This document shows positions 34,046-54,002 of a DNA stretch of 64,000 nt, piece by piece; position 1 is the first letter of the stretch, and each line of letters starts with the position of its first letter. Location: positions 224,698-288,697 of the IMG/VR virus record IMGVR_UViG_3300020473_000010; one strand, 5' to 3'. The notes beneath the pieces are model-generated. The model saw only the letters and a program-made list of their open reading frames with translations, was not told where the DNA came from and searched no databases. The translations under genes and the position numbers were made by a program.

Positions 34046-34057
34046 GGTTATTTTATT
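34046..34057 (-). repeat. Right copy of the 12-bp inverted repeat (GGTTATTTTATT)
   Basis: Exact reverse complement of 29151-29162; overlaps the tail-fibre stop codon. Confidence 0.6.
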
Positions 34058-37000: not shown

Positions 37001-39185
37001 CTGGATCACCATCTGGGGTTGTAATTCTTCCGGAAAGTTTTAAGTCTCCACCAAGCACTCTTTTTAAACTGACGTCATCAATAGTGAATGTATTCCCAGC
37101 AGAAGAAGATACAATTTGGATTACAAATCCGGACGAATGGATTCCATCGTCGGCGGCGCTTCCACCAGCGGAGGATCCCTTGGATCTAAAATATACAGTA
37201 TGTGTTCCATTTGATATAGGAAGTGGAGTATTAGTATGAGCAAAGCTAGCATTGGTTATTCTAGCAGTAGGAGAACCACTTACTCCTGAAATCGTATATT
37301 TAAATTTATAAAGCTTTGCTGGAAGTGCTTTTGCTCCGGAGGATACCATGTTGGCTTTGTTTTGGCTTAAGTTCCCTGGGGAAGCGTGGTGTGCATAAGT
37401 CCAGGCGCCGGAGCCATGGGTCCAACCATTTTGAGCACCACCAGTATTCCAATTGTTTGCATTTGGAAACCCGGTATTTTGAAGTATTTCGTTTGAATCT
37501 ACATTTGAACCCTCGAGATTTTCTAATACTAAATTAGAGAATCTTTTACTGGCCCATTTACCATATGTAGTCCCGGTTTTTAAAGATGGAGATGCTGATG
37601 GTGTTGATGCTGCTGAGATCTTCCACCCTTTGGATACATAGCTTCCAGGATCCGTAGAGGTAGTTCCTCCCAAGATAGTAACATAACAATAAGAATGGGA
37701 TTCGACATCTCTAATCCATAATTCTGGTATTCTGTTTGATCCTACAGTGATTACTATATCTGTGTTTGGGGCCCAAGGAGTGGAAGAGGTTGAATCTTTA
37801 ATATCGGTTGCATTAATCATCTCAACCGTTACTTGCGTTCCGTCTGTATCAATATATGGAGATCCTGTTTGTGCCGTATATTTTGCAGAAACGATGAATG
37901 AGCGATCAGCAGCATGGTCTGCATGGTTTTCGTTTCCGACAAAGTTAACTAAAAACTGATTAATGATTGTATCACCATTACCAACAGCGGCTCGACCTTC
38001 TGCTATTTTTAACCAATACCTGTCTGTTGTTACCGGTGTTCCAGTTACTATTGAAGATGCTGCGCCAGTCCCCCAACTTAATACTCCATTACCGTCGGTT
38101 TCAAGCCTGTCTCCAGCGGACCCGTCATCAGTTGGCAAGGTCCAAATAGTACTAGGGTTTGTGGCTACGGTTGGAGCTTGAAACCCTACGTAGTGGGAAT
38201 TATCAACATCATAAAACCTTAGTTGGCCTGTGACAGGGGCTGAAGGATCAGTATTATTATTTTTTATTCCTACGTTTCCGTCATCAACTGTTAATTTATC
38301 AGAAGGTGAAGTTGTTCCAATACCAACTTTTCCATCATGTTGAATTCGTACCTTTTCAGAATTATCTACCTGGAAAGTAATAGTAGAATTATTTGCTACA
38401 CCACCATCATCTGCATAAAATTCTAGATTCCCATCTGATGATTGAACACCTGAATAAGCGTTAGTATCAGAGTCTGTTAATCTAATTTCTGGAACTGGGG
38501 CCTTTAAATGAATAGGAGTGTCCGGAGAATCAATCCCAATACCAACTCTTTTATCGTTTTTTACAACAAAAGCTGGGGAACCTCCAACATTGATATCTAA
38601 AGCATGATAAGTTGTTCCAGATCCATTTTGATTGATTGTTACTGCAGTAGCAGTTCCGTCATTTGTAACTGTCCAACTTTCTGTTGTGCTGGCGTCTGTA
38701 TGAATCTGTGTATAATCACCCGTAACTTTTAAATCACCTTCAATTCTTGTATTTCCTACAATGTCTAATTTATATCCTGAAGTAACAGAGGTTGTTCCAA
38801 TACCAACTTTGTCAGCCGTTGTTGTTAATCTTACAGTTGAACCGTCATCTGTCCATCCTGAATTATAGCTTCCTGCAGGCCCTCCTAAAGAACCTGAAAT
38901 ATAAACATCACCTACAAATAAAGTTGTACCTTCTGTTCCTCCAATTCCTTGAGAGGGAGTTGATCCAGAGACTAATAGCCAAACATCTGAACCAACACAA
39001 TTGGCAGAAGAAGCATCTTTAAGCATGTTAGAATCATAAGCACCATCGGCGTTAGACGCTTTTGAAGCTGAATAAACCAGCATCGATGGTACGTATCCAG
39101 CCGTGTGTGTTGCAACGCCGGCTTTAGTACCAGAGGCAATTAGTTGTGTTGTTCTTATCTGTTTTGAACGAAAATCGCTAGACAT
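34056..39185 (-). CDS. Long tail fibre / receptor-binding protein (1709 aa)
   Basis: Repeated KVGIGT motifs, WTLP..DG..G..L.TDGNG.LSW, collagen-like G-X-Y hinges between repeated beta modules, C1q-like C-terminus (GTITLP..GAGTYEVSFQI). Confidence 0.8.
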   Translation of the reverse strand: MSSDFRSKQIRTTQLIASGTKAGVATHTAGYVPSMLVYSASKASNADGAYDSNMLKDASSANCVGSDVWLLVSGSTPSQGIGGTEGTTLFVGDVYISGSLGGPAGSYNSGWTDDGSTVRLTTTADKVGIGTTSVTSGYKLDIVGNTRIEGDLKVTGDYTQIHTDASTTESWTVTNDGTATAVTINQNGSGTTYHALDINVGGSPAFVVKNDKRVGIGIDSPDTPIHLKAPVPEIRLTDSDTNAYSGVQSSDGNLEFYADDGGVANNSTITFQVDNSEKVRIQHDGKVGIGTTSPSDKLTVDDGNVGIKNNNTDPSAPVTGQLRFYDVDNSHYVGFQAPTVATNPSTIWTLPTDDGSAGDRLETDGNGVLSWGTGAASSIVTGTPVTTDRYWLKIAEGRAAVGNGDTIINQFLVNFVGNENHADHAADRSFIVSAKYTAQTGSPYIDTDGTQVTVEMINATDIKDSTSSTPWAPNTDIVITVGSNRIPELWIRDVESHSYCYVTILGGTTSTDPGSYVSKGWKISAASTPSASPSLKTGTTYGKWASKRFSNLVLENLEGSNVDSNEILQNTGFPNANNWNTGGAQNGWTHGSGAWTYAHHASPGNLSQNKANMVSSGAKALPAKLYKFKYTISGVSGSPTARITNASFAHTNTPLPISNGTHTVYFRSKGSSAGGSAADDGIHSSGFVIQIVSSSAGNTFTIDDVSLKRVLGGDLKLSGRITTPDGDPAIELDMEGNLHGEQSIYLKEQTASNTDLVEYGQIWVKKIDDPNETHLYFTREDGTDIRLDAGADFNIIDSNNADSGYTWTHSPSDDVVNTDGTVDFVAGNNITISSDNTLKAIKFDANNAISAAIATVEPGEIVVGTNAAGKNPADDSATIAVSAGHKAEISVRVGGTTAAYQGNGTAAPGTANQFNVDYANITAYVIKDADNTTGALSMASSDSYAANIQFKNSAHIVLQMTEADLGNNAQLTVSAMQSGWNASNADPYTKLVMKIPVHIRIDSSNTVTQNVGIIVRKGKKGDTGTNGKDGFIINTTNNGVVALANVAANWAVTNSNADFVEVYGDRQGTAIQYLNKTDGAEGTTNDRFALDIETNGKVIGTSYSTTGVSRNVYSKWFDGAPSDASYLELRDTDVSGQILAKVYPSNVSPNAKLLVKDVVTQRTAGGAVDLHSIHVKIPVDAYVNSQAVDDYKVPLVIVKSGKRGADGAGGSAGSPGADGKDAWVIHATKRGVLSPAVVDSAGAVTIQSAVDHIAITGKRANTAIEYNSSNNGTEGTTADKFALKVTVAEDVAGTAYATDGTSAPIYSYWNSNKIKFKHTNSSGVILAQLEPELVGGEAKLKLVAFATELTSGKPLKYIELSIKVDAFVNGAAVTDHIVKIILDKTIPGADGANGSNGSNGSNGTNGTDAHYGWLSNSSPTVAAANDGTGYNLTSAGGTFHRYLGAVDKTGANSTYYTGTSGTNVAAVQNGLTFTITQSTGVYALTGGSWTTDSETFTVRAIVSGVTITKKYTITKAKMGAAGASGGSQSIIHIDKSADPSLFVQTQLVDNNGPDGQQTATIVNWDSELLDNNSLTVTTGGTNLTNGTITLPASGAGTYEVSFQIYAKTQNGGGDKKKKYRADLQQQPGGTGSWSTIATGNEITLQGDNVFATWSLMKQPRLISLTNNDKLRVIFTVQAVGTASNQVIKTEIGNTDSEALENWIRLTKLS
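34966..35016 (-). repeat. Degenerate 9-bp tandem repeat encoding GAN-GSN-GSN-GSN-GTN-GT (collagen-like)
   Basis: ttccattggttccatttgatccatttgatccgtttgacccatt. Confidence 0.7.
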
Positions 39186-42654: not shown

Positions 42655-42720
42655 ATGAGGTTACCTCCTATAATAAATATGGTCCCTATAGAATAATATG
42701 TTAAATATTTTATTCGTATA

Positions 42721-43920
42721 CTATTCAGGACATAATAAAAATCCGCCTATGGACTCGATTTTGTCCTTGAATGCTTTTGAGTGCTTTAAGGCTGTATTAA
42801 AATGGGAATAGGGGATTTTTCCAATGTTTGTATTTAAAATACCAGATCTTGTATATTCTTGAAATGTCTTAAGTGCGTTATCTAGGTTTTCGAAAATGAT
42901 AGGGTTTTCATTTTTTAAATTTATTTCTATGACCTCAGAGGATAATGAAGAAATTCTTTGTGATAATATTTCTTGTTCATTATGGTCTGTTGAAGATTCT
43001 AATCTAGAACACAACGATCTTAAATGATAATTATCTGTAATATTCGAAGTAATAATTGTTTCCCAATCATCAACAGAAAGATGGGGAGAGAAACCGTGTT
43101 TTTCTGAATCAACAACCGAAAGAGATAGTACATCTCCTAAATTCGAAGAGATAGGGAGAGCACTTGTTATTGAAGCTATATCAATAGAGGTATTAATATT
43201 TTCTACGCTGTTTCCATAAACTACCGGTAATACAGATAAAGATCCTTTAATCCAATTTGCAGCTAAGGTTGAAGAAACCTCTTCGGGGAATGATCTTGCA
43301 ATTAGTAATACATTCCATTTTAGTTCATGTGATTTCGTTAGTAACCTATCAAGTTCCCCTATTGACTGAGGAGCTCCTTCAATTATAATAATTTTGGCAT
43401 CATTTAAATAAAGCGATTTAGATCCAACCGACTTAAAGAAAACAGGATCTAGACCTATAGGAAATTTATTAGCGTTGATTACTTTAATGGTATTACGATT
43501 ATAATTTCCAATTTTTAAATTTATTCTTGCAGTTGAACTTAAAATAGATTTTAATGCTTGAAATATTTTAAGTTCTTCCCCATGCAAAAATTGCGATGAT
43601 AAATTTAATGATGCTTCAGATGTTGCTTTTGAATATGAGATCTTTTTTACATCGTTGTATAAAAATTTTACTAATAATGGCGAAGAACCTGGTGCTTCTT
43701 TTTCCATAGATTGTAGATGATCTAATAATATATTTCTTAATGCTAATTTAGAGCCGGAGCATTGTTGTTCAAAAACCCATCTCATAGTAGAAGGAGGGCG
43801 AATTTTATATATTTTATCTTCGTAATGAATCATTTTATGATGATCCCATATACCGTAACATGAAATCAATAGATTTTTTAACCATGCAGAATTTTGTGCT
43901 GGCTCATAAACTCTTTTCAT
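42721..43920 (-). CDS. Highly diverged GroEL/chaperonin-like protein lacking the GDGTTT ATP motif
   Basis: Apical-domain-like NDAKIIIIEG..QSIGELDRLL......NVLLIARSFPEEVSSTLAAN.IKG.L.V; DIASIT...ISSNLG; LESSTDHNEQEILSQRISSL (cf. GroEL [20 protein letters not shown]). Confidence 0.65.
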   Translation of the reverse strand: MKRVYEPAQNSAWLKNLLISCYGIWDHHKMIHYEDKIYKIRPPSTMRWVFEQQCSGSKLALRNILLDHLQSMEKEAPGSSPLLVKFLYNDVKKISYSKATSEASLNLSSQFLHGEELKIFQALKSILSSTARINLKIGNYNRNTIKVINANKFPIGLDPVFFKSVGSKSLYLNDAKIIIIEGAPQSIGELDRLLTKSHELKWNVLLIARSFPEEVSSTLAANWIKGSLSVLPVVYGNSVENINTSIDIASITSALPISSNLGDVLSLSVVDSEKHGFSPHLSVDDWETIITSNITDNYHLRSLCSRLESSTDHNEQEILSQRISSLSSEVIEINLKNENPIIFENLDNALKTFQEYTRSGILNTNIGKIPYSHFNTALKHSKAFKDKIESIGGFLLCPE

Positions 43921-44165
43921 TAATGAAACCCGTTTGGTTTTGCTCCTAAAGTTGCTAAAAAAGCAGTAAATTTATCAGCTGATTGTTCTATAATTTCGCT
44001 TGTCTTCTTTATTTTTTCCTGCTCTTCAGCTCGATCTAGTGCAACAGCACAGAGTCGTGAAATTACACCTATAGAAAAAGCAATTACACTGAACCAAAAA
44101 GATTGACTATACATAAAAAGGCTAAATATTATTAAGATTTCTGGCATGCCTATGTTTATTTTCAC
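43920..44165 (-). CDS. Small membrane protein
   Basis: Hydrophobic N-terminal segments; coupled to prkA. Confidence 0.55.
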   Translation of the reverse strand: MKINIGMPEILIIFSLFMYSQSFWFSVIAFSIGVISRLCAVALDRAEEQEKIKKTSEIIEQSADKFTAFLATLGAKPNGFH

Positions 44166-46087
44166 GAATCCCTCCAGAGATTATTTGATGCATATGTTAA
44201 AATTTCTTCTGCAGAATCTTCATTATATCCATATTCGTCGACTAGAGTCTGGACCATATCACTATATTTTTTTCTTTGGTCATCATCTCGAGATTTGCTT
44301 TTGGTGACGATTCTTGCCATATCTTTTACCGAATTGATTAAATAAGCTTCAATGGCTTCTTTTAAAGGTTCGTAACTTCTATAATCTACTGTTTCTCCAT
44401 GTCGCATTTTTGCAAACATATATGCAGTAACATCGGATCTAAATCCTTGGCGGGCGGATCCTGAAATTCCTATTACTTCTTCAATTGATTTCATAAATTT
44501 TTCATCGGCGTCGTATTCATCGCCAGTAATTGGATCTTTGATTTTGGATTTAGTTGTATATGCTTCAGCATTATCCAAATACGTATCAAATAAAGATTGA
44601 GCTTGCTCTTCATAGGCTGTAATAAACGCTTTTGCAATTTCGGTTTCTAAGATTCTAAGATATTCTTCTCTAACGGTTTTTTGAATAATTTCTAAACACT
44701 TTTCTCGGAAATCTTCATCTACGATTTGTTCTTTTACCATTTTTGTAAGAGATTTCATAACCCCTATAGGTGTAACACACGCTTTACTCTCATCAGTTAG
44801 TGCATGATCAATTGATTTCATGATAAATCTAGTAGATATTCCTTTCATACCTTCATTTCGTGATTCTTCTTTTAGGTCTTTAATATCAATCTTTTTGACT
44901 CTGCCTTTTTCAATAACTTCTTCTCCGTTGTAAATCTTCATTTTAGTTAAAAGATCACACTTGTTTGAGTGTTTTAATCTACTCATTACAGAAAACATTG
45001 AAGCAACTTTAATAGTATGGGGAGCAATATGCGCATTGAAATCAGATCTACTTAGGATTTTTTCGTAAATTTTAATTTCTTGATCAAGTTCTAAAATGTA
45101 AGGAACATTAATTTTTACAACTCGGTCTAATATAGCTTCGTTAGTATGCTCTGATTTAAATCTATTCCATTCTGATTCGTTACAGTGGGCAAGAATTACT
45201 CCGTCAAAAAAGACCATATCATGTTTTCCAGGGGCAGGTACCCTTTTTTCTTGAGTTGCTGTAATGATTGTATGCAAAAATTCAATTTCGTTTTTGAAGA
45301 CTTCGATTAATTCAACCAATCCTCGATTACCGACGTTGAAAGCACCGGTTAGATTTAATACCCGCGGGTCGTCTTCGGAATATTTATCAAGTTTCGAAAT
45401 ATCTTCTGAACCAATTAAAACTGAAACATCTTGACTATTTGCATCCATGGGTGGGACAGAAGCAATACCTCTACGTCCTCTCTGTGAAAACGAAGCCTGT
45501 ACCACAGGGAAGTTTTCATATTCACCGCTATGCTCATTTAAGAGTTTCCAGCGCGCAATGGGGCTTAAATCACCTTCAATTTTTACACCAAGTAGTTTTT
45601 CGAAATCTTCTCTTAGTGACCTTGGAAGGAGCTGTAAAGGCTCACCACGCTGAGGGTCTCCATCTAAGTGAAAATATTTTTCACCATCTAATGCTTTTTT
45701 AATGTGTTCTGTTAAAGCTGATTTCCCTGCTCCAACTGGGCCCATTAACAGTAGAACTTGTCTAGACTCTTCACCACGTAAAGCTGCTCCTTTAAGAAAC
45801 CTCATTAATTTCTCAATGACATGTTCCATTCCAAAAAATTCTTTGGAAAAATAATCATAAACTCTAATGTTTTCACCATTAAAGATTTTTCTTTTTCTGG
45901 GGTTTTCATCTGACATTATAGAAATACCTTTGGATTCAATGGCATCATATAATCGTTTATGAGCTAGCTTTGCAATCGATGGATTAGATTGAACTAGCTC
46001 TAAATAATCAAGAAAAGTTCCCTCAAATTTCTTTTCCTTTCTCTTGTTTCGTTGTTTTTTAATCAGGTCCAAAAATTTGTTTGACAT
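44162..46087 (-). CDS. prkA: PrkA/YeaG-family AAA+ serine protein kinase
   Basis: FFGME, LLLMGPVGAGKS, D...LIG.EDISKL..YSEDDPR, GNRGLVE.IE.FK, AH.NE.EW..FK...NEA.LDR, EGMKGISTRF. Confidence 0.93.
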   Translation of the reverse strand: MSNKFLDLIKKQRNKRKEKKFEGTFLDYLELVQSNPSIAKLAHKRLYDAIESKGISIMSDENPRKRKIFNGENIRVYDYFSKEFFGMEHVIEKLMRFLKGAALRGEESRQVLLLMGPVGAGKSALTEHIKKALDGEKYFHLDGDPQRGEPLQLLPRSLREDFEKLLGVKIEGDLSPIARWKLLNEHSGEYENFPVVQASFSQRGRRGIASVPPMDANSQDVSVLIGSEDISKLDKYSEDDPRVLNLTGAFNVGNRGLVELIEVFKNEIEFLHTIITATQEKRVPAPGKHDMVFFDGVILAHCNESEWNRFKSEHTNEAILDRVVKINVPYILELDQEIKIYEKILSRSDFNAHIAPHTIKVASMFSVMSRLKHSNKCDLLTKMKIYNGEEVIEKGRVKKIDIKDLKEESRNEGMKGISTRFIMKSIDHALTDESKACVTPIGVMKSLTKMVKEQIVDEDFREKCLEIIQKTVREEYLRILETEIAKAFITAYEEQAQSLFDTYLDNAEAYTTKSKIKDPITGDEYDADEKFMKSIEEVIGISGSARQGFRSDVTAYMFAKMRHGETVDYRSYEPLKEAIEAYLINSVKDMARIVTKSKSRDDDQRKKYSDMVQTLVDEYGYNEDSAEEILTYASNNLWRDS

Positions 46088-46100
46088 AATTCGATTGCTC

Positions 46101-47393
46101 CTAAATTTCATATGGTGCATTATCCACCATCGTTATTAACTTTACTTCGCTTCCCCACAAATGTTTACAATGTTGTACAACTTGGTTGGCGTGTTCTATT
46201 TGAATATCTCTTCCGTCATGTTCATGATGCAAAATTAAGATATGGCCTAAATCAATACTTTCTACGTAAATTGACGGAATAGAATTTCCGCCGATTTGTT
46301 TTAGAAGTCTAGTTTTCACTGATTCCCATCCCTCTTCATCGCTGACATCATCTATTATGTAATTATCGTCCGCAGGGGAAAACGAAAATAAATTTAATTC
46401 TTCACAGTCTTCTCGAGTAAGATATTGTCTAATAAAAGATTCATCATTGTGGACTTCACGGGCTAAAAAGCATTCTTCTAAACCATATCTCTCTTCGATT
46501 TTATTAAATAGATGAAAACCTAAATGATAAGGATTTATTCTCCCAATATGTGGGCGAACTACTTGGTTGTGAGATTTCAAAAAAGGTATATGAAATTCTT
46601 GTGGAAGATTTAATTCATGAAGAATTTTATAATGCCACATACATGCCCAGCCTTCATTCATTGTTTTTGTTCTTATTTGGGGCATAAAATAATATGCAGA
46701 ATCTCTTACAATTGAAATAATATCTTTTTGCCAATCTTCTTGGTTTTCCCCATGGGCTTCAATGAAGCCAAGAAGATCATGTTCGGGATAAGGTGGGATC
46801 AATGTTGGGTCGAAATCTTTTTGATCTAATCTTGCATCTGAATATTTTTTATATTCCTCAGCTAAATCTTGGTAATCAACAGGATGACGAGGGACTTGGT
46901 AAGAAACAGCATGACAAGCATCAATATAATTTTCAACTTTTTCAATACCAATTGCTGGATTTTCAATATATTTCTGGATACGTTTTTTAGCATTACGCAT
47001 TCTAGGAACAACCGTGTCAGCTCTAGTATACATAAAATGGCGGTTTTTCTTAAAAAAATCAGAATGGCCTACACAGTGGGCCATAATAAGAATTTGTAAA
47101 TATAGAGGGTTTTCGCGCATCAAATATGATATACAAGGATCTGAATTAATAATTAATTCATAAGGCAAACCTGTGGCGCCGGCATTGTATTGGCTTCGTT
47201 GAATTTCAAACGATTTGCCATAGGACCAATGTCCATAATGGGTTGGCATGCCGTGATATGACATATTCCCAATCATTTCGTAATAATCGCATGTTTCATA
47301 CGTTATTGGATACCAATCAAGGTTATGCTTCTGTGCAATCTCACAGATTTTTTCATCCCACTCTTGCAGATCTAATAAATCCCAATTACTCAT
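46101..47393 (-). CDS. spoVR: SpoVR/YcgB family protein
   Basis: GMPTHYGHWSYGK, YELIINSDPCISYLM, AHCVGHSDFFK.N, PQIRTKTMNEGWA..WH, NPYHLG. Confidence 0.93.
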   Translation of the reverse strand: MSNWDLLDLQEWDEKICEIAQKHNLDWYPITYETCDYYEMIGNMSYHGMPTHYGHWSYGKSFEIQRSQYNAGATGLPYELIINSDPCISYLMRENPLYLQILIMAHCVGHSDFFKKNRHFMYTRADTVVPRMRNAKKRIQKYIENPAIGIEKVENYIDACHAVSYQVPRHPVDYQDLAEEYKKYSDARLDQKDFDPTLIPPYPEHDLLGFIEAHGENQEDWQKDIISIVRDSAYYFMPQIRTKTMNEGWACMWHYKILHELNLPQEFHIPFLKSHNQVVRPHIGRINPYHLGFHLFNKIEERYGLEECFLAREVHNDESFIRQYLTREDCEELNLFSFSPADDNYIIDDVSDEEGWESVKTRLLKQIGGNSIPSIYVESIDLGHILILHHEHDGRDIQIEHANQVVQHCKHLWGSEVKLITMVDNAPYEI

Positions 47394-47647
47394 AATTTTG
47401 ATACCTCGTATAGGTTTAATATTGGATGATCGGATATTTCTCCAGATGACCATAAAACAGAAACTACATCTGTAAAATCTTCATGATAATCTTGAATCCA
47501 TTTTCCATTTCTTTGTTTGATAGTTTCAACTAACCAAAACGCATTGTATGGTGTAGATGATATTATTATTCCAAAGTCGGTTTTAGTATCTTGGATTTTT
47601 TTATTCCTATAACTCCATCCAGTTCCTACTACGGTTCCTTTTTTCAT
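47390..47647 (-). CDS. Small SH3-like hypothetical protein
   Basis: KKGTVV...FGIII...VSVLWSSGEI; coupled at both ends. Confidence 0.55.
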   Translation of the reverse strand: MKKGTVVGTGWSYRNKKIQDTKTDFGIIISSTPYNAFWLVETIKQRNGKWIQDYHEDFTDVVSVLWSSGEISDHPILNLYEVSKL

Positions 47648-48816
47648 CTTTCACCGCCAAAAAATTTCTTAAAAGCTGGCCAAACATCATTTTTTTCTCT
47701 TATAAAAACTACTTTAAATTTTTCATCTTCTAAAGGTTCATATAATTTTCCTAAAGCTGTTTCATTCATCCACCTAAGACTTTCTTCTTTTGGCTCTATC
47801 TCGCAATATCCGTATAATTGACAGCGTTGTTTAAGTTTTTCAGTATATTGCTTTGTTTTATCATTATCGCTGGGCCAATTATCTCCATCTGAACAATGAA
47901 ATCCGTAGATATTCCAGGAAGCAGAATCGTATCTTTTGTCGATTGCATCACAGACATATTCCAAAGCAGGGGAAACTAAAGTTCCACCACCTGATCCACG
48001 GTGGAAAAATTTATCTTCATCTACTTCGTATGCTTGGGTATCATGGGCTATGAAAACGATTTCTGTTTTCTCATATCTGCTTCTAATAAAATGATACAAC
48101 AAGAAGAAAAAAGACCGAGCTAAATATTTTTTAGTAGTACTCATCGATCCTGAGACATCCATTATGAAAAATATTACTGCATTCGATGCATGTTTTTCGT
48201 CTTTTTTAATATGTTTATATCTCAAATCGGATTCACGGAAAGAAAAATTTTCATCTGATTCTGGATCATAAGTTCCTGAGCGGATTGCTGCTTTTTTTCG
48301 TCGTATACGTCGTTTTGCTGTCTCTTTTTTACTTAATCTAGGGCGGATCCCTTCGTTTCTGTAACCTTTCCTTTTCCACTTCTCAGAAAAGATATATTTT
48401 GCTTGTTTCTTTTCTAGATCGGGAAGATTTAAATCGCGAAATAAATAATCTGCTAATTCTTCTAAAGTAACTTCAACATCATAGTATTCTTGGCCCGGTT
48501 CGTTTCCAGGTTTTCCGGTACCAGGCTTTTGGCTAGTTTGGGGGTTTTGACCAATTTTTTGACCCCGTTTAACATCATGCTCTCCGGCGGCTCCAACTCC
48601 TCCTGAAGAATTTTTTCCATATACAAATTTGTATTCTTTTATTCCTCGCACAGGAATACGGATTTTCTTCTTTCCATCTTGGCCAATAATCGATTCTTCT
48701 GCTACAATATCATGAATTCCTTCGCGGATTGCTTTTTCGATTTTTTGCTTATGGCGACGTCGGTCTGATGCTGAACGATCTGCTGTTGTTTTGTGATGTG
48801 AAAAAACGCTTCCCAT
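47644..48816 (-). CDS. yeaH: YeaH/YhbH (DUF444) vWA-like protein
   Basis: DRRRH, DLNLPDL, DLRY, AVIFFIMDVSGSM, FIAHDT.A.EVDE..FF...GGGT, WNIYGFHCSDGDNW. Confidence 0.92.
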   Translation of the reverse strand: MGSVFSHHKTTADRSASDRRRHKQKIEKAIREGIHDIVAEESIIGQDGKKKIRIPVRGIKEYKFVYGKNSSGGVGAAGEHDVKRGQKIGQNPQTSQKPGTGKPGNEPGQEYYDVEVTLEELADYLFRDLNLPDLEKKQAKYIFSEKWKRKGYRNEGIRPRLSKKETAKRRIRRKKAAIRSGTYDPESDENFSFRESDLRYKHIKKDEKHASNAVIFFIMDVSGSMSTTKKYLARSFFFLLYHFIRSRYEKTEIVFIAHDTQAYEVDEDKFFHRGSGGGTLVSPALEYVCDAIDKRYDSASWNIYGFHCSDGDNWPSDNDKTKQYTEKLKQRCQLYGYCEIEPKEESLRWMNETALGKLYEPLEDEKFKVVFIREKNDVWPAFKKFFGGER

Positions 48817-48872
48817 AAATAAGCTCCAAATTTCCTATTAATAAATATGAATTGCACTCTGAAATTTATAAA

Positions 48873-49283
48873 TCAAATTCCTAAATGTGTTCTTGCCCAA
48901 ATAATTGCGGGCTGTAACCAATAATAACAATCTCCTTCTATTTCACCTGGTGTTAACCATTCATAATCTTCGTGTTCATTAATTCCGGTCATAGGATTCC
49001 GTTGGAGAAATGGGTCTTGATGAGTTTCTACTAGAAAAATTGTTAAGCGCGATAGATTGAGTGGGCCTGACCGTCGGTCGGTAGTATCTATATCAATTCC
49101 AGCCTCTTCCCAACATTCTCTCACTGCACAAGCCCAATCTGATTCTCCTGGTTCTTTAATTCCTTTTGGGATATCCCAAGTTCCTTTTGATCTTTTTCTT
49201 ATAAATTCAGGCCCTTTTAGACCCAAAAAAAGAATTTTATCTTCAAATTTTCTATATACAATAAACCCAGCACCGTCCTTCAT
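48873..49283 (-). CDS. Nudix hydrolase
   Basis: WDIPKGIKEPGESDWACAVRECWEEAGI Nudix box. Confidence 0.92.
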   Translation of the reverse strand: MKDGAGFIVYRKFEDKILFLGLKGPEFIRKRSKGTWDIPKGIKEPGESDWACAVRECWEEAGIDIDTTDRRSGPLNLSRLTIFLVETHQDPFLQRNPMTGINEHEDYEWLTPGEIEGDCYYWLQPAIIWARTHLGI

Positions 49284-49293
49284 TCTTTATCTC

Positions 49294-49662
49294 CTAACGT
49301 TTATAATCATCACATAGTCTAATTACATCATTCGGATAATAAGTAGAAACTTCAACTAGCCTTACCAGATTATTATCTTGTGAACAAAATCGATGAATAG
49401 TGCCGGCAGGAATATCATATGAAAAACCAGGTCCAGCTATATAAACTGATGATGGGTTTCCATCTGGATCTTCTCCTATCTCAAGTCTTAGACAACCTTC
49501 TAGAACACAGATTGATTCATCTTTTTTTTCATGATATTGCCTTGATAATCTTTGCCCCGGGTTAATTTGAATAAATTTCCCCGTACATTTTCCAGGAATA
49601 TCTCCCCAAATTTCTTCTTGACCCCATGGTTTTTCGATTATTCTTGGTTTTGATGACACCAT
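49294..49662 (-). CDS. Cupin, mannose-6-phosphate isomerase type II C-terminal-like
   Basis: KPWG, RLSRQYH.KKDE, IPAGTIHRF, EVST..PNDVIRL.DDY.R. Confidence 0.8.
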   Translation of the reverse strand: MVSSKPRIIEKPWGQEEIWGDIPGKCTGKFIQINPGQRLSRQYHEKKDESICVLEGCLRLEIGEDPDGNPSSVYIAGPGFSYDIPAGTIHRFCSQDNNLVRLVEVSTYYPNDVIRLCDDYKR

Positions 49663-49663
49663 A

Positions 49664-50236
49664 TTATTCTCCTTTTTTTATTTTCCAATCCCACCTAATA
49701 TTTCCATCTCCAATTAATATTCCAGCACAAGGAATTTTGTATTTTGCACTAACTTCTTCACACTGGGAAATATATGCAGGGCAATCCTCATAAATTATTA
49801 TACTTTTAGGAAGAAGAGTATTTATAAGACTTTCAAAACAAGGTCTTTTATTTGGGTCGCCTGAACACATCAATATCATATTTGATATGTCTAATTTGTG
49901 AGCAGATAACCATTGTCGGGGGCCAAGAAGTTCATCTCTGCCAGTAACCAGGGCAACAATACAAGAATCATCCATTAAATAATCTCTTAAGCTTGATACG
50001 GTATCTAATATTGGTGACCCTTTTTCGGGATATCCTGTAAAATCTGAAAAATCTAAATCCCAAATATTGGGGTTTTTGTCGTATTCTCCCGTTTCGCGCC
50101 AGGCGGAGTATTTGCCAGGAGTAAGGAAATCTTCAACTGATGTTTTTTTATTTATTCTTTTAACAAGACCCTGGGTAGTACAGAGTGTTTCGTCGAAATC
50201 AAAAATAATTAACTGTTTATTTTTTGGTAAATTCAT
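49664..50236 (-). CDS. HAD-superfamily hydrolase
   Basis: IFDFDETL, VTGR, K, YED. Confidence 0.78.
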   Translation of the reverse strand: MNLPKNKQLIIFDFDETLCTTQGLVKRINKKTSVEDFLTPGKYSAWRETGEYDKNPNIWDLDFSDFTGYPEKGSPILDTVSSLRDYLMDDSCIVALVTGRDELLGPRQWLSAHKLDISNMILMCSGDPNKRPCFESLINTLLPKSIIIYEDCPAYISQCEEVSAKYKIPCAGILIGDGNIRWDWKIKKGE

Positions 50237-50769
50237 TTGATATTATTCCTTTGGAATTGTTTATTAGCCCTTTGGATTAATTCACTGCTGCTTTGAATTT
50301 TTCCTCCAGATCCAACCCCGGTTATTATTTGACATCCAATTTCTTGGCAAATATTCCACTCTGGAATTGTTGATGCATCAAATCGATCACCGCCTTTGGT
50401 GAAATAATTAGGTTTTAAAGCCCTAATAGCTTCGATTACAGTTTGATCAGGGGGTACCGCTTCCCATGGTACAACATAATCAACACCTTCGAGAGCATTA
50501 ATAATTTCCATCCTTTCGGCTAAGGGCATGAATGCATATCCTTTTTTTCTTTCCAAAAATGAATCAGCATTAACTACAATGACAACGTTTGGCTTTAACG
50601 CTATAGGGTACTTGTATCTATTATTTGCTAGATGAGCTGTCCCTAAAATACATCTTACATGTCCGATGTGTAGAGGATCGAAACCTCCGGATGTCATATA
50701 GATTTCTTTTGTATCACCAATAGCATCTAGATGAATACGTAAATCTTGTATAGATTGAAAAATTGCCAT
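50233..50769 (-). CDS. Cytidylyltransferase-like (HIGH) nucleotidyltransferase
   Basis: SGGFDPLHIGH, FLERKKG, ERMEII, FTKGGDR, KIQSSS. Confidence 0.88.
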   Translation of the reverse strand: MAIFQSIQDLRIHLDAIGDTKEIYMTSGGFDPLHIGHVRCILGTAHLANNRYKYPIALKPNVVIVVNADSFLERKKGYAFMPLAERMEIINALEGVDYVVPWEAVPPDQTVIEAIRALKPNYFTKGGDRFDASTIPEWNICQEIGCQIITGVGSGGKIQSSSELIQRANKQFQRNNIK

Positions 50770-50781
50770 GTATTACCTCCT

Positions 50782-52389
50782 TTATTTTAAGCAATTATTA
50801 AAGTCAGGAGGAAATATATTTTTATTTTTGCTCCAGAAATAATTCCATCCGGCATCGAGGATATAAGTTACTGCGTGATCATTTGAACTTCTTACAGATC
50901 TTCCTACAGATTGTACAATAGTTTTAGCTGTCTGTAAAGGATACCACCATTTCCATTTATTCATTCTTTTTGAGACGAGTTTGTCGCCCAAATAAGGATA
51001 CGGGATTTTACATATTATTTGAAACCTGCTGGCATCTCCTTTTAAATCGACTCCTTCAGACATTGAAGGACTTAAAAGAATAGTCGGGCGGGAATCATTG
51101 CAGTGTTTAAAAAGTATTTTATCCCTGTTTGTAGAATCATGAATTAGTAACCTTCTAGAATTAATATTTTCTTTCAAATATCTTGCGATTTTATAAGAGT
51201 GGCAGTGAATAATTCCCTTTTCGTTGCTATGTTCTTCCATGATTGCTTGTACAGCAGCTGCCATTTTTGGAAGCCCTTGATCAATATCTTTTTTACCCAT
51301 TTTTGCTATTGGGGAAACAATAATTGGACGATTAGAAACTGGGAATGGGCTTGGAATAGAGATAAATTCAGCATCTTCAGGAGTTATTCCTAAAATTCTG
51401 CAAAATGCTTCTCTATTCATGACTGTTGCCGACATTAAAAGACAGTGTTCAGACTTATCAAATAGGTACTGACTACAATAAGGAGCAATATCAATTGGCT
51501 TGAATTCAAAACGCCTCCCTTTTCTTTTATCTGTAGTTGCAATATTCATTACCCAATTATCTTTATCATATAATTCTAAAAATCGCGATAGTTTAGAGTG
51601 GTGCGACTCAATCATAGACCATTTTCTTTCAAGGGATATAAAATCGGATAATCTGTTTTTTATCCCTTGTTGTTCTAGCATGTTAGCCATTTTTGTTCGC
51701 ATGGCTGATAGTTTTGGCATATATGTTTTTTTAATCCAATTGGCAACTTGAAATTGTGTTTTTAGTTGTGGCATCTGTATTTTTAATATTGCTTTCGAAA
51801 AATGTTCCGTCACAACAACTTCAACAAATTTACTCATTTCCAATTCTACATTATGGCATTCATCGATAACCGTAATCTGTCTTGGAGGAAGGTGCCCAGA
51901 ATGATTAATTTCTGTCATGAAATATGGAAAATTAGTTACTCCGTGATAACCGTTGATAAAACGGTTTTTTTCTTTAACATAATGACAACCTCCGCCACAA
52001 CAGGCCTTGAACTTTTCATCTTGGCTGGCTTTTAATTCACGTCGAGCTTCTTGGCAGGTTTTCGTTTTATAATATTGGCACCTATAATTTGAGGATGATT
52101 TCAAAGAGAGCATGCCAGAAGGTGAGAAATCATTCATATACTGAGCTTGAAGGATTTTCTGTGTGGTAAGATAGTATGCTGCTGAAGTGTATCCAGAAGA
52201 TACATTCTGATGATCTAAAAGATAACGTGCAATTGTGTATCCAATTGCTGATTTCCCTACTCCGGTCCCAGCTTCGATGATTACGAATTTTTTATTTTTA
52301 TTTATAAAAGCATCTAGAGCAAATTCTATTGCTTTTTCTTGTTCTTTTCTAGTTTTTTTATATGGAAAATAGGAAGTATATTTAAACAT
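50782..52389 (-). CDS. DinG/Rad3-like SF2 helicase
   Basis: EAGTGVGKS, Cys cluster, DECH, MSAT, EGVD, Q..GR.VRS..D...YILD. Confidence 0.9.
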   Translation of the reverse strand: MFKYTSYFPYKKTRKEQEKAIEFALDAFINKNKKFVIIEAGTGVGKSAIGYTIARYLLDHQNVSSGYTSAAYYLTTQKILQAQYMNDFSPSGMLSLKSSSNYRCQYYKTKTCQEARRELKASQDEKFKACCGGGCHYVKEKNRFINGYHGVTNFPYFMTEINHSGHLPPRQITVIDECHNVELEMSKFVEVVVTEHFSKAILKIQMPQLKTQFQVANWIKKTYMPKLSAMRTKMANMLEQQGIKNRLSDFISLERKWSMIESHHSKLSRFLELYDKDNWVMNIATTDKRKGRRFEFKPIDIAPYCSQYLFDKSEHCLLMSATVMNREAFCRILGITPEDAEFISIPSPFPVSNRPIIVSPIAKMGKKDIDQGLPKMAAAVQAIMEEHSNEKGIIHCHSYKIARYLKENINSRRLLIHDSTNRDKILFKHCNDSRPTILLSPSMSEGVDLKGDASRFQIICKIPYPYLGDKLVSKRMNKWKWWYPLQTAKTIVQSVGRSVRSSNDHAVTYILDAGWNYFWSKNKNIFPPDFNNCLK

Positions 52390-52415
52390 TGTGGTTGAGC
52401 TCCATGGTTATTTAA

Positions 52416-52444
52416 ATAATACAATTTTTATAATTGGTTTACAA
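52416..52444 (-). promoter_or_regulatory. Promoter TTGTAA-N17-TATTAT
   Basis: Exact spacing, upstream of the helicase. Confidence 0.6.
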
Positions 52445-52660
52445 TCAAACCTTTGAAATTTTCCAACTTTGGAAAATTAATATTTGACCATTAATCCATA
52501 TTTTATATTTCCATTTAGAAAATGATTCTTGATAATTCCAATAATCATAACCCTCTATATCAATAACAATCCCTAATGAGTGGCGAGTACCATTAATTTT
52601 ACACCAAACTAAATCGCCAGGCCTGGCGGTTTCATCCCAGAACGAAGCACTATCTCGCAA
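52445..52660 (-). CDS. Small 'GDLV' SH3-like protein (start uncertain)
   Basis: PGDLVW...LGIVIDI...YKIWINGQI. Confidence 0.55.
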   Translation of the reverse strand: MRDSASFWDETARPGDLVWCKINGTRHSLGIVIDIEGYDYWNYQESFSKWKYKIWINGQILIFQSWKISKV

Positions 52661-53223
52661 ATGTGCTCTAGTCTTTCTATATGTTCGTACGCATCCCAGG
52701 GATTATCTCCTATTGCACAGACTCCATGATTGGCTTGCCCAACTATATCATAAATAAGTATGTTTGAATCTGGACTTCTCATTGCGTTGAAGGTTGCTCG
52801 AGCTAATTCAGGACTAGTCACTGGAAGGACTGGAACGCTTGGACCGACTCTTGTATATCGACTTACTTCTGGAAATTCGGCAGATAATTTTTGTAAATCC
52901 CAGCCGGCGTATATGGCTGCAATAATGTTTGTTGGGTGAAGATGAACTACTGAGCGGGTGGGTTTATGATATCTTTGGAGAAGGAGATGCATATCTAGCT
53001 CGCCAGAGGGGGTTGCTTCTGGTTTACCTATAATATTGCAACCAGCGGGAGTTATACGAACTTTCATAATGTGTTCTGGGTGGAGTATGGTTTTGCGCCA
53101 CCCTGATGGGGTTATATATAAAGTCTTAGAATTCCTTCTGCACAGGCTTATGTTCCCATCACGAGTTGTGATCCAGCCTTTTTCGTAAGCACGCCTCATG
53201 ACGTCACCCATTGCTGTTAGCAT
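52609..53223 (-). CDS. Class II aldolase/adducin family protein
   Basis: DGNIS, ITPSG, PSGEL.MH, VVHLHP, NHGV. Confidence 0.88.
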   Translation of the reverse strand: MLTAMGDVMRRAYEKGWITTRDGNISLCRRNSKTLYITPSGWRKTILHPEHIMKVRITPAGCNIIGKPEATPSGELDMHLLLQRYHKPTRSVVHLHPTNIIAAIYAGWDLQKLSAEFPEVSRYTRVGPSVPVLPVTSPELARATFNAMRSPDSNILIYDIVGQANHGVCAIGDNPWDAYEHIERLEHICEIVLRSGMKPPGLAI

Positions 53224-53429
53224 TATAATCTCCTTAAATTTGGCGATACAACATAAATTAATTCGTTGTTAATTAATAATTCATATTCATTATTTATGAT
53301 TTCATTAATTATTCCAATAGAACCAAATATTTCAATATTTGGTATTTGAACAGTTCCAAACTGTTCTGAGAGTATATAGCAAAACTCAGTCTCTAAAACC
53401 TGAATTAAATCTCCGGTACAATATTGCAT
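53223..53429 (-). CDS. Small 'GDL' SH3-like protein
   Basis: TGDLIQV...IGIINEI...YELLINNELIYV. Confidence 0.55.
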   Translation of the reverse strand: MQYCTGDLIQVLETEFCYILSEQFGTVQIPNIEIFGSIGIINEIINNEYELLINNELIYVVSPNLRRL

Positions 53430-53504
53430 AGTACACCCTTGAAGGTTGGTAAGTTATGCATTTATTGTACCGAGTATAGATGTATTGTTCAGCCTTTACT
53501 TTGC

Positions 53505-53738
53505 TTAAACAAATGCTATATTATAATCTATAGTGCTGGAAGTAGATTTTTTCATATATTGTTCTCTGACAAACCAAAAACTGTTTTCACAATAAATTAT
53601 CCACCCATCTTTAATAGGGGGATTATCGGGATGGACATCTGGATCACCTTTGTCCATTATAATTCCTACTCCCTCTAGTAGAGGTACGCCATGTATTTCA
53701 ACCCGTACCTCTACTAAGTCTCCTATTCTTAAATTCAT
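53505..53738 (-). CDS. Small 'GDLV' SH3-like protein
   Basis: LRIGDLVEV...GVGIIMD; ATGA-coupled start at 53738. Confidence 0.6.
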   Translation of the reverse strand: MNLRIGDLVEVRVEIHGVPLLEGVGIIMDKGDPDVHPDNPPIKDGWIIYCENSFWFVREQYMKKSTSSTIDYNIAFV

Positions 53739-53998: not shown

Positions 53999-54002
53999 GT
54001 TG

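What the first reader, a model, noticed from the sequence alone, without database searches (positions are those of the whole stretch)
44162..48848. Intact yeaH-spoVR-prkA stress/dormancy triad carried by a phage
Seen: all three genes are full length with their motifs, in the order yeaH, small SH3-like ORF, spoVR, prkA, behind a CATATTTAT motif. Known: PrkA/YeaG, YeaH/YhbH and SpoVR/YcgB co-occur in bacteria and archaea, usually with prkA first, and are linked to nitrogen starvation, stationary phase and sporulation; the mechanism is unresolved. Inference: the phage uses this AAA+/vWA/putative peptidase module to control host dormancy, or has repurposed it for late assembly.
Basis: partly seen in the sequence, partly recalled or inferred. 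Interest (0 to 1): 0.65.

Follow-up and report, generated by a model that had tools for sequence, protein, structure and literature searches.

The report
Jumbo phage carries PrkA-YeaH-SpoVR starvation module
An uncultured 289-kb aquatic jumbo phage, like at least 110 related viral contigs checked here, keeps an intact and strongly conserved copy of the bacterial PrkA/YeaH/SpoVR starvation-response gene trio, which probably lets the phage run the host's starvation-type protein recycling for its own benefit.

Summary
On the minus strand lie YeaH/DUF444 (47644-48816), an 85-aa ORF (47390-47647), SpoVR (46101-47393) and PrkA (44162-46087). All are full length, keep the family-invariant residues and are joined by overlapping stop/start codons. 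The contig is a T4-type jumbo phage (288,697 bp, about 96% complete), not host contamination.

The trio is not a recent passenger. Of the 166 IMG/VR contigs that encode a PrkA relative, the best 80 were fetched. Every one with enough flank, plus two phage contigs mis-binned into MAGs, carries the trio in the same yeaH>spoVR>prkA order and the same phage neighbourhood. All 78 of the nearest bacterial loci have prkA>yeaH>spoVR.

Each of the three proteins forms a phage-only clade (support 100). No cellular relative exceeds 59% identity. dN/dS is 0.01-0.04. One subclade has an empty site and probably lost the trio.

Phages captured the trio independently several times (Thermus phages, RsoM2USA, huge phages).

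Best reading, which is inferred: a phage-run version of the YeaG-dependent bulk proteolysis and proteome-recycling programme of starved bacteria. Control of sporulation is unlikely. Timing, host and biochemistry were not tested.

It is a new member of a known kind, of moderate to high interest.

The parts
48841..48849 (-). CATATTTAT motif in the 56-nt gap between the NUDIX gene and yeaH. A TATAAAT lies at 48864-48870 and a GGAG ribosome-binding site at 48824-48827. Candidate promoter element.
   Evidence: Sequence read and pattern search. In the genome, 11 of 12 copies are on the coding strand and 7 sit 27-33 nt before an ATG. The motif is not conserved upstream of yeaH in relatives.
47644..48816 (-). 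YeaH/YhbH-like protein (DUF444, 390 aa): a conserved basic N-terminal part plus a vWA domain with a complete MIDAS site.
   Evidence: Pfam PF04285 at E 4.6e-115. Best NCBIfam match is TIGR02877, but below its cut-off. D220/S222/S224/T279/D310 are invariant in 35 sequences. PHROG 19072.
47390..47647 (-). 85-aa ORF whose start overlaps the yeaH stop and whose stop overlaps the spoVR start (ATGA at both ends). Accessory: found only in the closest relatives.
   Evidence: overlaps. Homologues only in L088 (43% identity) and L003/L186 (33%). No Pfam, PHROG or PADLOC family. Fold unresolved.
46101..47393 (-). SpoVR/YcgB-like protein (430 aa from ATG 47393; the longest ORF starts at 47453). Residues 1-335 form a zincin-like helical domain with H-x3-H...NEGWA; a C-terminal SpoVR_C domain follows.
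   Evidence: Pfam PF04293 at E 2.1e-119 and PF24755. Invariant residues. AlphaFold model with pLDDT 88.7 and pTM 0.87. In the wide PDB search, nearly all 49 matches with Z of 5 or more are zincin metallopeptidases, best Z 9.8.
44162..46087 (-). PrkA/YeaG-family AAA+ ATPase with the PrkA C-terminal domain (641 aa from ATG 46087; the longest ORF starts at 46120, 652 aa).
   Evidence: Pfam PF08298 at E 2e-136 and PF06798 at 2.5e-80. Walker A and 20 other family-invariant positions checked are kept in all 35 aligned sequences. Matches the solved PrkA-family chain 9xip_A at E 1.9e-91. PHROG 22605.
42721..44165 (-). Two tightly packed downstream ORFs in the same apparent transcription unit: an 81-aa ORF (43920-44165) and a 399-aa truncated GroEL-like protein (42721-43920). 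These belong to the phage backbone, not to the acquired trio.
   Evidence: Overlapping ends. The next CATATTTAT lies at 42673-42681, before the following gene. GroEL-like by PHROG 5725 at E 6e-8 and by the Atlas structure, TM 0.68. The 399-aa gene is present directly after NUDIX in relatives that lack the trio.

Best explanation
Shown:
- This is a genuine, long-resident, selected phage copy of the bacterial PrkA(YeaG)-YeaH-SpoVR(YcgB) module.
- It was acquired once by the ancestor of a large clade of aquatic T4-type jumbo phages, from a 'type A' cellular lineage. That type is found in Clostridia and at least one other phylum.
- It was re-ordered to yeaH>spoVR>prkA, inserted between a NUDIX gene and a GroEL-like gene, and placed behind a phage promoter-like region.

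Inferred mechanism:
- During infection the phage expresses the three proteins as one translationally coupled unit, independent of the host's starvation signals (RpoS, NtrC, sporulation sigma factors).
- PrkA is the AAA+ ATP-driven motor. YeaH is its vWA/MIDAS adaptor. SpoVR is a zincin-like metal-dependent partner.
- Together they switch on the starvation-type bulk turnover and remodelling of cytoplasmic proteins that depends on YeaG in E. coli.
- In nutrient-poor water this would turn host protein into amino acids and energy for building a very large virion.
For: Identity and integrity.

Phage context.

Conservation:
- 166 IMG/VR contigs encode PrkA relatives; the best 80 kept are 70-86% identical.
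- All 77 of those loci with enough upstream flank have all three genes in the same order and neighbourhood.
- The same holds for 30 of 45 loci found through the neighbouring helicase instead.
- PrkA (70-86% identity) is better conserved than the phage's own helicase (48-68%) or PhoH (44-72%).

Selection: dN/dS is 0.009-0.039 for all three genes wherever dS is not saturated.

Single origin: the phage clade is monophyletic with SH-aLRT 100 for PrkA, YeaH and SpoVR. The nearest cellular PrkA is at most 59% identical.

Repeated capture: other large phages took up other subtypes. This argues for a general benefit.

Function in cells:
- YeaG is required for starvation-induced, largely non-specific degradation of cytoplasmic proteins, which feeds new protein synthesis (PMC13684143).
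- B. subtilis PrkA shows ATP-dependent casein hydrolysis that needs Walker A K108 (PMC9512850).

SpoVR model: it matches zincin peptidase folds.

Loss of host control: the Bacillus-type regulatory Thr217 is Ile in all phage rows.

Neighbours fit a proteostasis theme: a GroEL-like gene in the same unit, Hsp20, a MoxR/vWA/metallopeptidase-like pair and a tmRNA.
Against: - There are no expression, timing, host or biochemical data.
- The E. coli result concerns YeaG, which belongs to a different PrkA subtype from the phage's (the YeaG-type relatives sampled here are 32-36% identical to the phage PrkA). That paper does not test YeaH or YcgB.
- B. anthracis PrkA had negligible protease and kinase activity in vitro (PMC13001217). 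The B. subtilis activity is very slow.
- SpoVR lacks the catalytic Glu of the HExxH motif: Cys in phages, Val in Clostridia. The fold Z-scores are middling for a helical protein. Peptidase activity is therefore unproven.
- One subclade of relatives has an empty site, so the module is dispensable in some lineages.
- The complex prediction for PrkA with YeaH gave no verdict.
Confidence: 0.4

Rival explanations
1. Dormancy or sporulation control. The phage uses the module to push the host into a dormant or spore state, or to hold it out of one, so that the phage persists or finishes replication.
For: PrkA, YhbH and SpoVR mutants are defective in sporulation in Bacillus (PMC9512850, PMC13001217). 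The best NCBIfam match for YeaH is the sporulation YhbH model, and the nearest cellular relatives include many Clostridia. A marine virome study reported spoVR as its most abundant viral 'sporulation' gene and proposed this role (PMC8940887).
Against: The trio is common in non-sporulating bacteria and acts there in starvation physiology. YeaH and SpoVR score below the equivalog cut-offs. The clade includes Tara Oceans sequences and marine MAG-binned contigs. Outside the trio, none of the other window ORFs scanned matched a sporulation family. 'Type A' PrkA also occurs in a second phylum, so a spore-forming host is not implied.
Confidence: 0.2
2. A targeted regulator or counter-defence device. 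The AAA+/vWA/zincin-like set removes or remodels a few specific host proteins, such as defence factors, regulators or ribosome hibernation factors, rather than driving bulk turnover.
For: AAA+ plus vWA pairs usually act on particular clients (established knowledge of MoxR-vWA systems). The phage carries a second set of this kind. Cofitness phenotypes differ between bacteria, as expected for a regulator.
Against: No match to defence or anti-defence families. All three proteins stay close to the cellular consensus, which is unusual for a part in an arms race (dN/dS 0.01-0.04). Proteomics in E. coli shows broad, non-specific loss.
Confidence: 0.17
3. Late assembly or virion maturation. The module has been re-used as a chaperone or protease for head or tail morphogenesis, or is packaged into the virion.
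For: The same promoter-like motif precedes a head-tail adaptor-like gene and a baseplate wedge gene. A GroEL-like gene shares the transcription unit.
Against: The trio lies between helicase/NUDIX and PhoH, far from the capsid block at genome position about 172 kb. The capsid gene itself lacks the motif. A related subclade manages without the trio. There is no sign of a changed domain architecture.
Confidence: 0.08
4. Artefact: host contamination, a chimeric assembly, or a recent neutral pick-up.
For: None found. Two near-identical neighbourhoods sit in bins labelled as bacteria.
Against: The same flanks appear in contigs from about 59 metagenomes. The GC of the trio (0.34-0.35) matches the genome (0.36). 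The bins' contigs carry the full phage synteny, and one bin also has its own, different PrkA. The trio forms phage-only clades under strong purifying selection.
Confidence: 0.01

Closest known systems
Bacterial PrkA-YhbH-SpoVR operon of the 'type A' subfamily (Clostridia and another phylum)
   Same: The same three families with the same domain make-up and all invariant residues. The genes are adjacent on one strand. Identity is 56-59% (PrkA), 41-49% (YeaH) and 40-46% (SpoVR).
   Different: The order is yeaH>spoVR>prkA instead of prkA>yeaH>spoVR, the order in all 78 nearest bacterial loci. The phage proteins form their own clade on a long stem. The module is driven from a phage intergenic region, and in the closest relatives an extra 85-aa ORF is inserted.
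E. coli YeaG (SpdA)/YeaH/YcgB starvation module
   Same: The same three families, acting together by cofitness. YeaG is needed for starvation-induced bulk proteolysis. This is the functional model I propose for the phage.
   Different: It belongs to a different PrkA subtype: the YeaG-type relatives sampled here are 32-36% identical to the phage PrkA. In E. coli the genes are split into two operons under RpoS and NtrC, whereas the phage copy is one unit with no host-type control visible.
B. subtilis / B. anthracis PrkA with YhbH and SpoVR (sporulation)
   Same: The AAA+ Walker A lysine, essential in B. subtilis (K108), is conserved as K122 of the 641-aa phage protein.
   Different: The Bacillus-type proteins (631 aa) are 38-42% identical and form a separate 'type B' group. 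The PrkC-phosphorylated Thr217 is Ile in every phage sequence. I assigned type B to Bacillus from its length and residue numbering, not from a named sequence.
Other phages with the trio: Thermus phages phiYS40/TMA/MN1/Lalka, Ralstonia jumbo phage RsoM2USA, huge phages LR745206, LR756502, LR756504 and LR756511
   Same: Large phages that carry PrkA, a YeaH-like and a SpoVR-like gene. PHROGs already holds the three families as 'unknown function'.
   Different: Only 30-35% identical, and they branch with other cellular subtypes, so these are independent captures. RsoM2USA and LR756511 keep the canonical order. TMA has yeaH>spoVR>X>prkA. None belongs to the aquatic clade described here.
MoxR-type AAA+ / vWA systems (RavA-ViaA, CbbQ-CbbO, CobS-CobT type)
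   Same: An AAA+ ATPase is paired with a MIDAS-bearing vWA protein. A second such set, with a metallopeptidase-like domain, lies 7-10 kb away in this window.
   Different: PrkA has its own AAA and C-terminal domains (PF08298, PF06798), not the MoxR AAA_5 type. SpoVR is a separate third protein.

Membership tests
PrkA/YeaG family (PF08298 + PF06798) | N-terminal PrkA-type AAA domain and PrkA C-terminal domain, both full length | tested here: met
   Pfam E 2e-136 (profile positions 2-357 of 358) and 2.5e-80 (1-255 of 255). Matches the solved PrkA-family chain 9xip_A at E 1.9e-91.
PrkA/YeaG family (PF08298 + PF06798) | Walker A lysine and the family-invariant acidic, Asn and Arg positions of the ATPase | tested here: met
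   GPVGAGKS plus N254/R255/G256/E259/E262/K265, D295, H301, N303, E304 and R322 are invariant in 35 sequences from phages and bacteria.
PrkA/YeaG family (PF08298 + PF06798) | NCBIfam equivalog score for PRK15455 (YeaG type) | tested here: not met
   397.7 bits against a cut-off of 576. It is a family member but not an equivalog of E. coli YeaG.
PrkA/YeaG family (PF08298 + PF06798) | ATP hydrolysis, and ATP-dependent proteolysis or kinase activity | not testable with these tools
   Needs purified protein. The literature itself disagrees.
YeaH/YhbH (DUF444, PF04285) | Full-length DUF444 with a vWA MIDAS site (D-x-S-x-S, T, D) | tested here: met
   Pfam E 4.6e-115. D220, S222, S224, T279 and D310 are invariant.
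YeaH/YhbH (DUF444, PF04285) | Equivalog of sporulation protein YhbH (TIGR02877) | tested here: not met
   405.1 bits against a cut-off of 467.95.
SpoVR/YcgB (PF04293 + PF24755) | Full-length SpoVR domain plus the SpoVR C-terminal domain, with the family's invariant His/Glu/Asp positions | tested here: met
   Pfam E 2.1e-119 and 4.9e-7. H55, E79, H106, H110, D112, E154, E247, H254 and H390 are invariant. It falls below the PRK11767 equivalog cut-off: 278 bits against 679.
Zincin (gluzincin) metallopeptidases, as the fold class of SpoVR | Zincin catalytic-domain fold | tested here: inconclusive
   Foldseek against the PDB found nothing. In the wide search, almost all 49 matches with Z of 5 or more are zincin peptidases (M1, M3, M32, M4, M30, M61; Z up to 9.8; 160-207 residues aligned). 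Such Z values are common for helical models.
Zincin (gluzincin) metallopeptidases, as the fold class of SpoVR | HExxH motif with a catalytic Glu, plus a downstream Glu ligand | tested here: not met
   The motif is H-C-V-G-H in phages and H-V-Y-G-H in Clostridia, so the Glu is absent. An N-E-G-W-A block recalls the M1 'NEGFA' ligand motif (that comparison rests on my own knowledge). It lies 137 residues downstream, not about 18.
PrkA-YeaH-SpoVR three-gene system | All three genes present, adjacent and on the same strand | tested here: met
   The genes are linked by overlapping stop and start codons.
PrkA-YeaH-SpoVR three-gene system | Canonical order, prkA first | tested here: not met
   Here, and in every clade member that has the trio, the order is yeaH>spoVR>prkA. 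A few bacteria (L176, L181) and Thermus phage TMA share this order.
Starvation-induced protein degradation programme (SpdA/YeaG-dependent) | Module-dependent bulk loss of stable cytoplasmic proteins | not testable with these tools
   Defined by 14C-leucine flux and proteomics in PMC13684143. It needs infection or expression experiments.
T4-type (Gp23-capsid) jumbo phage | Gp23-family major capsid protein, T4-type baseplate wedge, and a genome over 200 kb | tested here: met
   PF07068 at E 7.9e-64. Baseplate wedge PHROGs. 288,697 bp, 96% complete. The nearest isolate capsid is only 43.5% identical.

The most novel reading that the evidence does not exclude
A widespread clade of aquatic jumbo phages carries its own bulk-proteolysis engine. 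This would be a phage-controlled, host-signal-independent PrkA/YeaH/SpoVR machine that liquidates the starved host's proteome to pay for a 200-360 kb virus. If so, it is a new class of auxiliary gene, for proteome recycling rather than for metabolism. It would also be a stripped-down natural version of the module, lacking the Thr217 control site, in which SpoVR acts as a non-canonical zincin hydrolase coupled to the AAA+ motor through the vWA protein.
Probability: 0.3. Interest if true: 0.8.

Novelty: new member of a known kind. Interest (0 to 1): 0.6.

Why it matters
The PrkA/YeaG-YeaH-SpoVR trio is one of the most widespread bacterial modules whose mechanism is still unsettled. Only in 2026 was YeaG tied to starvation-induced bulk proteolysis.

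This work finds a large clade of jumbo phages, known only from metagenomes, that has kept a complete copy under very strong purifying selection. Other big phages captured the trio independently. Both facts say that the module's activity is directly useful to a virus inside a nutrient-limited cell.

That reframes the 'viral sporulation genes' reported in ocean viromes. It suggests a new way phages could obtain amino acids and energy.

It also offers a compact three-gene operon, with no visible host-type control, that can be expressed in E. coli. Such expression could test three open points: whether the three proteins are sufficient for bulk protein turnover, whether they form a complex, and whether SpoVR is the hydrolase.

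Tried and rejected
- Megablast of the block against 50,697 phage records found no match.
- Complex prediction on PrkA 25-641 with YeaH 1-383 scored 0.00. This is no verdict, neither for nor against binding.
- Foldseek of the SpoVR model against the PDB gave nothing at E of 0.001 or better.
- The AlphaFold model of the 85-aa ORF, built from three sequences, was unusable (pLDDT 41).
- PADLOC found no defence-system family. The only hit was a weak P-loop match of PrkA to DolB at E 2.6e-5.
- The CATATTTAT motif is not kept upstream of yeaH across the clade, and the capsid gene lacks it. I therefore did not assign a temporal class.
- I checked whether the phage is a 'moraphage' (PMC12619734).
- The donor could not be pinned down. 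Phage sister to Bacillota type A has only 63% support, and an equally similar type A exists in a second phylum.
- No paper was found for PDB 9xip, 9xiq or 9xir.
- I did not run the large representative-protein search, because the families were already clear.
- No alternative genetic code was used.

Full report
WHAT IS THERE

All the genes of the finding are on the minus strand. Reading in the direction of transcription:

| Gene | Coordinates | Size |
|---|---|---|
| YeaH/DUF444 | 47644-48816 | 390 aa |
| small ORF | 47390-47647 | 85 aa |
| SpoVR | 46101-47393 | 430 aa |
| PrkA | 44162-46087 | 641 aa |

The longest open frames for SpoVR and PrkA start at 47453 and 46120.

Pfam matches are close to full length and very strong: DUF444 at 4.6e-115, SpoVR at 2.1e-119 plus SpoVR_C, AAA_PrkA at 2e-136 plus the PrkA C-terminal domain at 2.5e-80.

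NCBIfam finds the same families, but each scores below its equivalog cut-off. These are family members, not equivalogs of the E. coli or Bacillus proteins.

The sequence shows that the small ORF's ATG overlaps the yeaH stop. It also shows that an ATG at 47393 overlaps the small ORF's stop. The closest relative starts SpoVR at the matching place, which gives 430 aa. Public gene calls give PrkA 641 aa.

An 81-aa ORF and a 399-aa ORF follow PrkA with overlapping ends.

The next copy, at 42673-42681, precedes the gene after the 399-aa ORF. The apparent unit is therefore yeaH, orf85, spoVR, prkA, orf81 and a GroEL-like gene.

MOTIFS

- PrkA keeps Walker A (GPVGAGKS) and the family's invariant acidic, Asn and Arg positions checked. 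These are invariant across 35 phage and bacterial sequences.
- YeaH has a complete vWA MIDAS site: D220, S222, S224, T279 and D310.
- SpoVR keeps its invariant His, Glu and Asp residues, including H106-x3-H110-x-D112 and an N-E-G-W-A block.

IS IT A PHAGE, AND IS THE BLOCK REALLY PART OF IT?

The window is the last 64 kb of an IMG/VR virus record of 288,697 bp, judged 96% complete. The record has:
- a T4-type Gp23 capsid gene;
- baseplate wedge, PhoH and helicase genes;
- 94% of its genes on one strand;
- three tRNAs and a tmRNA.

The nearest isolate capsid, from a Flavobacterium phage, is only 43.5% identical. There is therefore no close cultured relative. The GC content of the block (0.34-0.35) matches the genome (0.36).

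A scan of IMG/VR with PrkA found 166 contigs that encode relatives. The best 80 were 70-86% identical. In every one of the 77 loci with enough upstream sequence, all three genes lie in the order yeaH>spoVR>prkA. They also share one neighbourhood: helicase ... NUDIX, the trio, the 399-aa gene ... PhoH.

By my count of IMG sample numbers, these contigs come from about 59 metagenomes. They include contigs of 204-361 kb.

The word search found thousands of related proteins. Its best 120 are 76-100% identical, and some come from Tara Oceans.

Two contigs filed under bacterial MAGs carry the same phage synteny: a 305.8-kb contig labelled 'Methylococcaceae TMED69' and a 101-kb contig labelled 'Halobacteriovorax'. 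The second bin also has its own, unrelated PrkA. Contamination or a chimeric assembly is excluded.

WHERE DID IT COME FROM?

Among one genome per prokaryote species, the nearest PrkA genes were 78 loci at 56-59% identity. They were mostly Clostridia, and every one had the order prkA>yeaH>spoVR.
- In the phylum of the first sampled genome, 11 of 151 genomes have this 'type A' at 55-58%. Most of the others have a 'type B' at 34-42%.
- In a second phylum, 7 of 121 genomes have type A at 55-58%.

Trees of PrkA, YeaH and SpoVR each place the phage sequences in one clade with SH-aLRT 100, on a long stem. The cellular type A sequences lie outside that clade. Which cellular group is sister is not resolved (support 63).

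All three genes therefore share one history. The block was captured once from a type A lineage, its order was changed, and it then diversified for a long time inside phages.

Synonymous sites are saturated in most pairs. Where they are not, dN/dS is 0.009-0.039 for all three genes. PrkA is more conserved across the clade than the phage's own helicase or PhoH.

IS IT CORE TO THE CLADE?

I anchored a second scan on the neighbouring helicase.
- 30 of 45 loci have the trio in place.
- One well-supported subclade of eight loci has helicase, in five of them NUDIX, in three the 399-aa gene, and PhoH, with nothing between them. This is an empty site. No PrkA domain was found anywhere in five of those records, though they are only 15-41% complete.
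- In the helicase tree this subclade is nested among trio-bearing lineages, so a loss is the simpler reading. The root is not known.
- Another group has the trio elsewhere on the contig: L220 and L041 come from the same record.

OTHER PHAGES

Among 50,697 phage records, PrkA is found in 17, SpoVR in 9 and YeaH-like sequences in 33. The records are:
- Thermus phages: 11 records with PrkA, 4 of them with a SpoVR match;
- Ralstonia jumbo phage RsoM2USA;
- four uncultured huge phages;
- a short Enterobacter record (PrkA and YeaH only);
- a Xanthomonas phage record (a YeaH-like match only).

Bacillus phages carry only a YhbH-like vWA fragment.

These are 30-35% identical to the window's proteins and branch with other cellular subtypes, so phages took up the trio several times. 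RsoM2USA and LR756511 keep the canonical order. Thermus phage TMA has yeaH, spoVR, one extra gene, then prkA.

PHROGs already holds all three families, labelled 'unknown function'. In the searchable literature:
- the RsoM2USA paper lists the genes without comment;
- two papers on marine jumbo phages do not mention them;
- an oxygen-minimum-zone virome study reported spoVR as its most abundant viral 'sporulation' gene and proposed induction of sporulation.

WHAT THE PARTS LOOK LIKE

PrkA matches a recently solved 'serine protein kinase' chain, 9xip, at 1.9e-91. I found no paper for it.

The SpoVR model is confident: pLDDT 88.7, pTM 0.87. Foldseek finds nothing in the PDB. The Foldseek-independent search returns almost only zincin metallopeptidase domains over residues 1-335, with Z up to 9.8. 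Two cautions apply. The Z values are middling for a helical protein. The HExxH glutamate is missing, replaced by Cys in phages and Val in Clostridia. I therefore call SpoVR zincin-like and probably metal-binding, with hydrolase activity unproven.

The small ORF occurs only in the window's nearest relatives. Its fold is unresolved. Small beta-barrel (KOW or SH3-like) neighbours at TM 0.53-0.57 are only a lead.

The 399-aa downstream protein is a truncated GroEL-like viral protein. It belongs to the backbone, because it is present at empty sites.

HOW IT MOST LIKELY WORKS

Established for cells:
- The three genes are each other's best cofitness partners in six bacteria, with phenotypes on amino-acid use.
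- E. coli YeaG is required for a starvation-induced, largely non-specific degradation of cytoplasmic proteins. That degradation supplies amino acids and ATP for new synthesis.
- B. subtilis PrkA hydrolyses casein slowly, in an ATP- and Walker A-dependent way, and is regulated through Thr217.
- B. anthracis PrkA showed negligible activity on its own.

Inference for the phage:
- The trio is expressed from a phage promoter region as one translationally coupled unit.
- It turns on this proteome-recycling programme irrespective of host signals.
- PrkA acts as the motor, YeaH as the MIDAS adaptor and SpoVR as the metal-dependent partner.

Points in favour:
- complete retention of the cellular active-site residues under strong constraint;
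- repeated capture by very large phages;
- loss of the Thr217 control position, which is Ile in every phage row (the mapping to Bacillus rests on length and residue numbering);
- a neighbourhood rich in proteostasis genes: GroEL-like, Hsp20, a MoxR/vWA/metallopeptidase-like pair and a tmRNA.

I put about 0.4 on this mechanism. That the block is a real, selected phage module I put at about 0.95 or higher.

Rivals are dormancy or sporulation control (0.2), a client-specific regulator or counter-defence device (0.17) and virion assembly (0.08).

The motif also precedes a head-tail adaptor-like gene and a baseplate wedge gene. Late co-expression therefore remains possible. The capsid gene lacks the motif, and relatives do not conserve it.

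WHAT COULD NOT BE DONE

The complex prediction gave no verdict. The host is unknown.

VERDICT

This is a new member of a known kind: a phage-specific, re-ordered lineage of the PrkA-YeaH-SpoVR module. Interest is moderate to high, because it makes an unsettled and very widespread bacterial module testable from a new angle.

Noticed in passing
G000:C1:3-355, minus strand (locus L233; outside the window, at the start of the phage contig): A full-length one-piece tmRNA (Rfam RF00023, 102 bits) with predicted tag ANNNYFYDSERLAA. ARAGORN also reads a version running across the two contig ends, which hints that the linear record is a circular permutation.
   Followed up: partly
window 57871-58977 (-) and 55723-57141 (-): A second AAA+/vWA/peptidase-like set: a MoxR-type AAA_5 ATPase, and a protein with DUF2201_N ('putative metallopeptidase') plus a vWA-like DUF2201 domain. 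Its architecture parallels the PrkA/YeaH/SpoVR trio.
   Followed up: partly
window 42721-43920 (-) and 43920-44165 (-): A 399-aa truncated GroEL-like viral protein (PHROG 5725 at E 6e-8; Atlas TM 0.68 to the GroEL family) and an 81-aa ORF are packed directly behind prkA. The GroEL-like gene is conserved across the clade and is also present where the trio is absent.
   Followed up: partly
window 62428-62877 (-): An Hsp20-family small heat-shock protein gene (PHROG 432, E 1.7e-20). It adds to the proteostasis theme of this genome end.
   Followed up: no
window 48873-54776 (-): A run of sugar or nucleotide-metabolism genes just upstream of the trio: NUDIX, cupin (mannose-6-P isomerase-like), cytidylyltransferase-like, class II aldolase and phosphomannomutase.
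   Followed up: no
L088 (NHDW01000006.1, 305,838 bp) and L089 (PBIO01000025.1, 101,404 bp): Contigs filed under 'Methylococcaceae bacterium TMED69' and 'Halobacteriovorax sp.' MAGs carry the full phage synteny around the trio. They are almost certainly phage contigs binned with bacteria.
   Followed up: yes
L123 / G001 (JADPRS010000007.1, 'Lutibacter sp. B2'): An assembly labelled as a flavobacterium carries a Clostridia-type trio (57% PrkA identity) that nests among Bacillota in the tree. The label or the assembly may be mixed.
   Followed up: no
protein cluster P0061: A phage-clade PrkA (83% identical) is recorded on a contig of about 140 Mb in ENA. This suggests phage sequence inside a large, probably eukaryotic, assembly. 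I did not fetch or examine it.
   Followed up: no
window 29238-33997 (+) and 34056-39185 (-): The only plus-strand gene block in the window, six ORFs, coincides with a flip of GC skew. Next to it lies a 1709-aa ORF with no Pfam or PHROG family.
   Followed up: no
L176 and L181 (unnamed bacterial genomes G012, G105); L086 (Thermus phage TMA): The permuted order yeaH>spoVR>prkA is not unique to this phage clade. It also occurs in two 'type B' bacterial loci and, with one extra gene, in Thermus phages.
   Followed up: partly
PDB entries 9xip, 9xiq, 9xir: A solved 692-residue 'serine protein kinase' of the PrkA family (30 chains in 3 entries) exists without a paper in the searchable library. It would be the template for modelling the phage protein.
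   Followed up: partly
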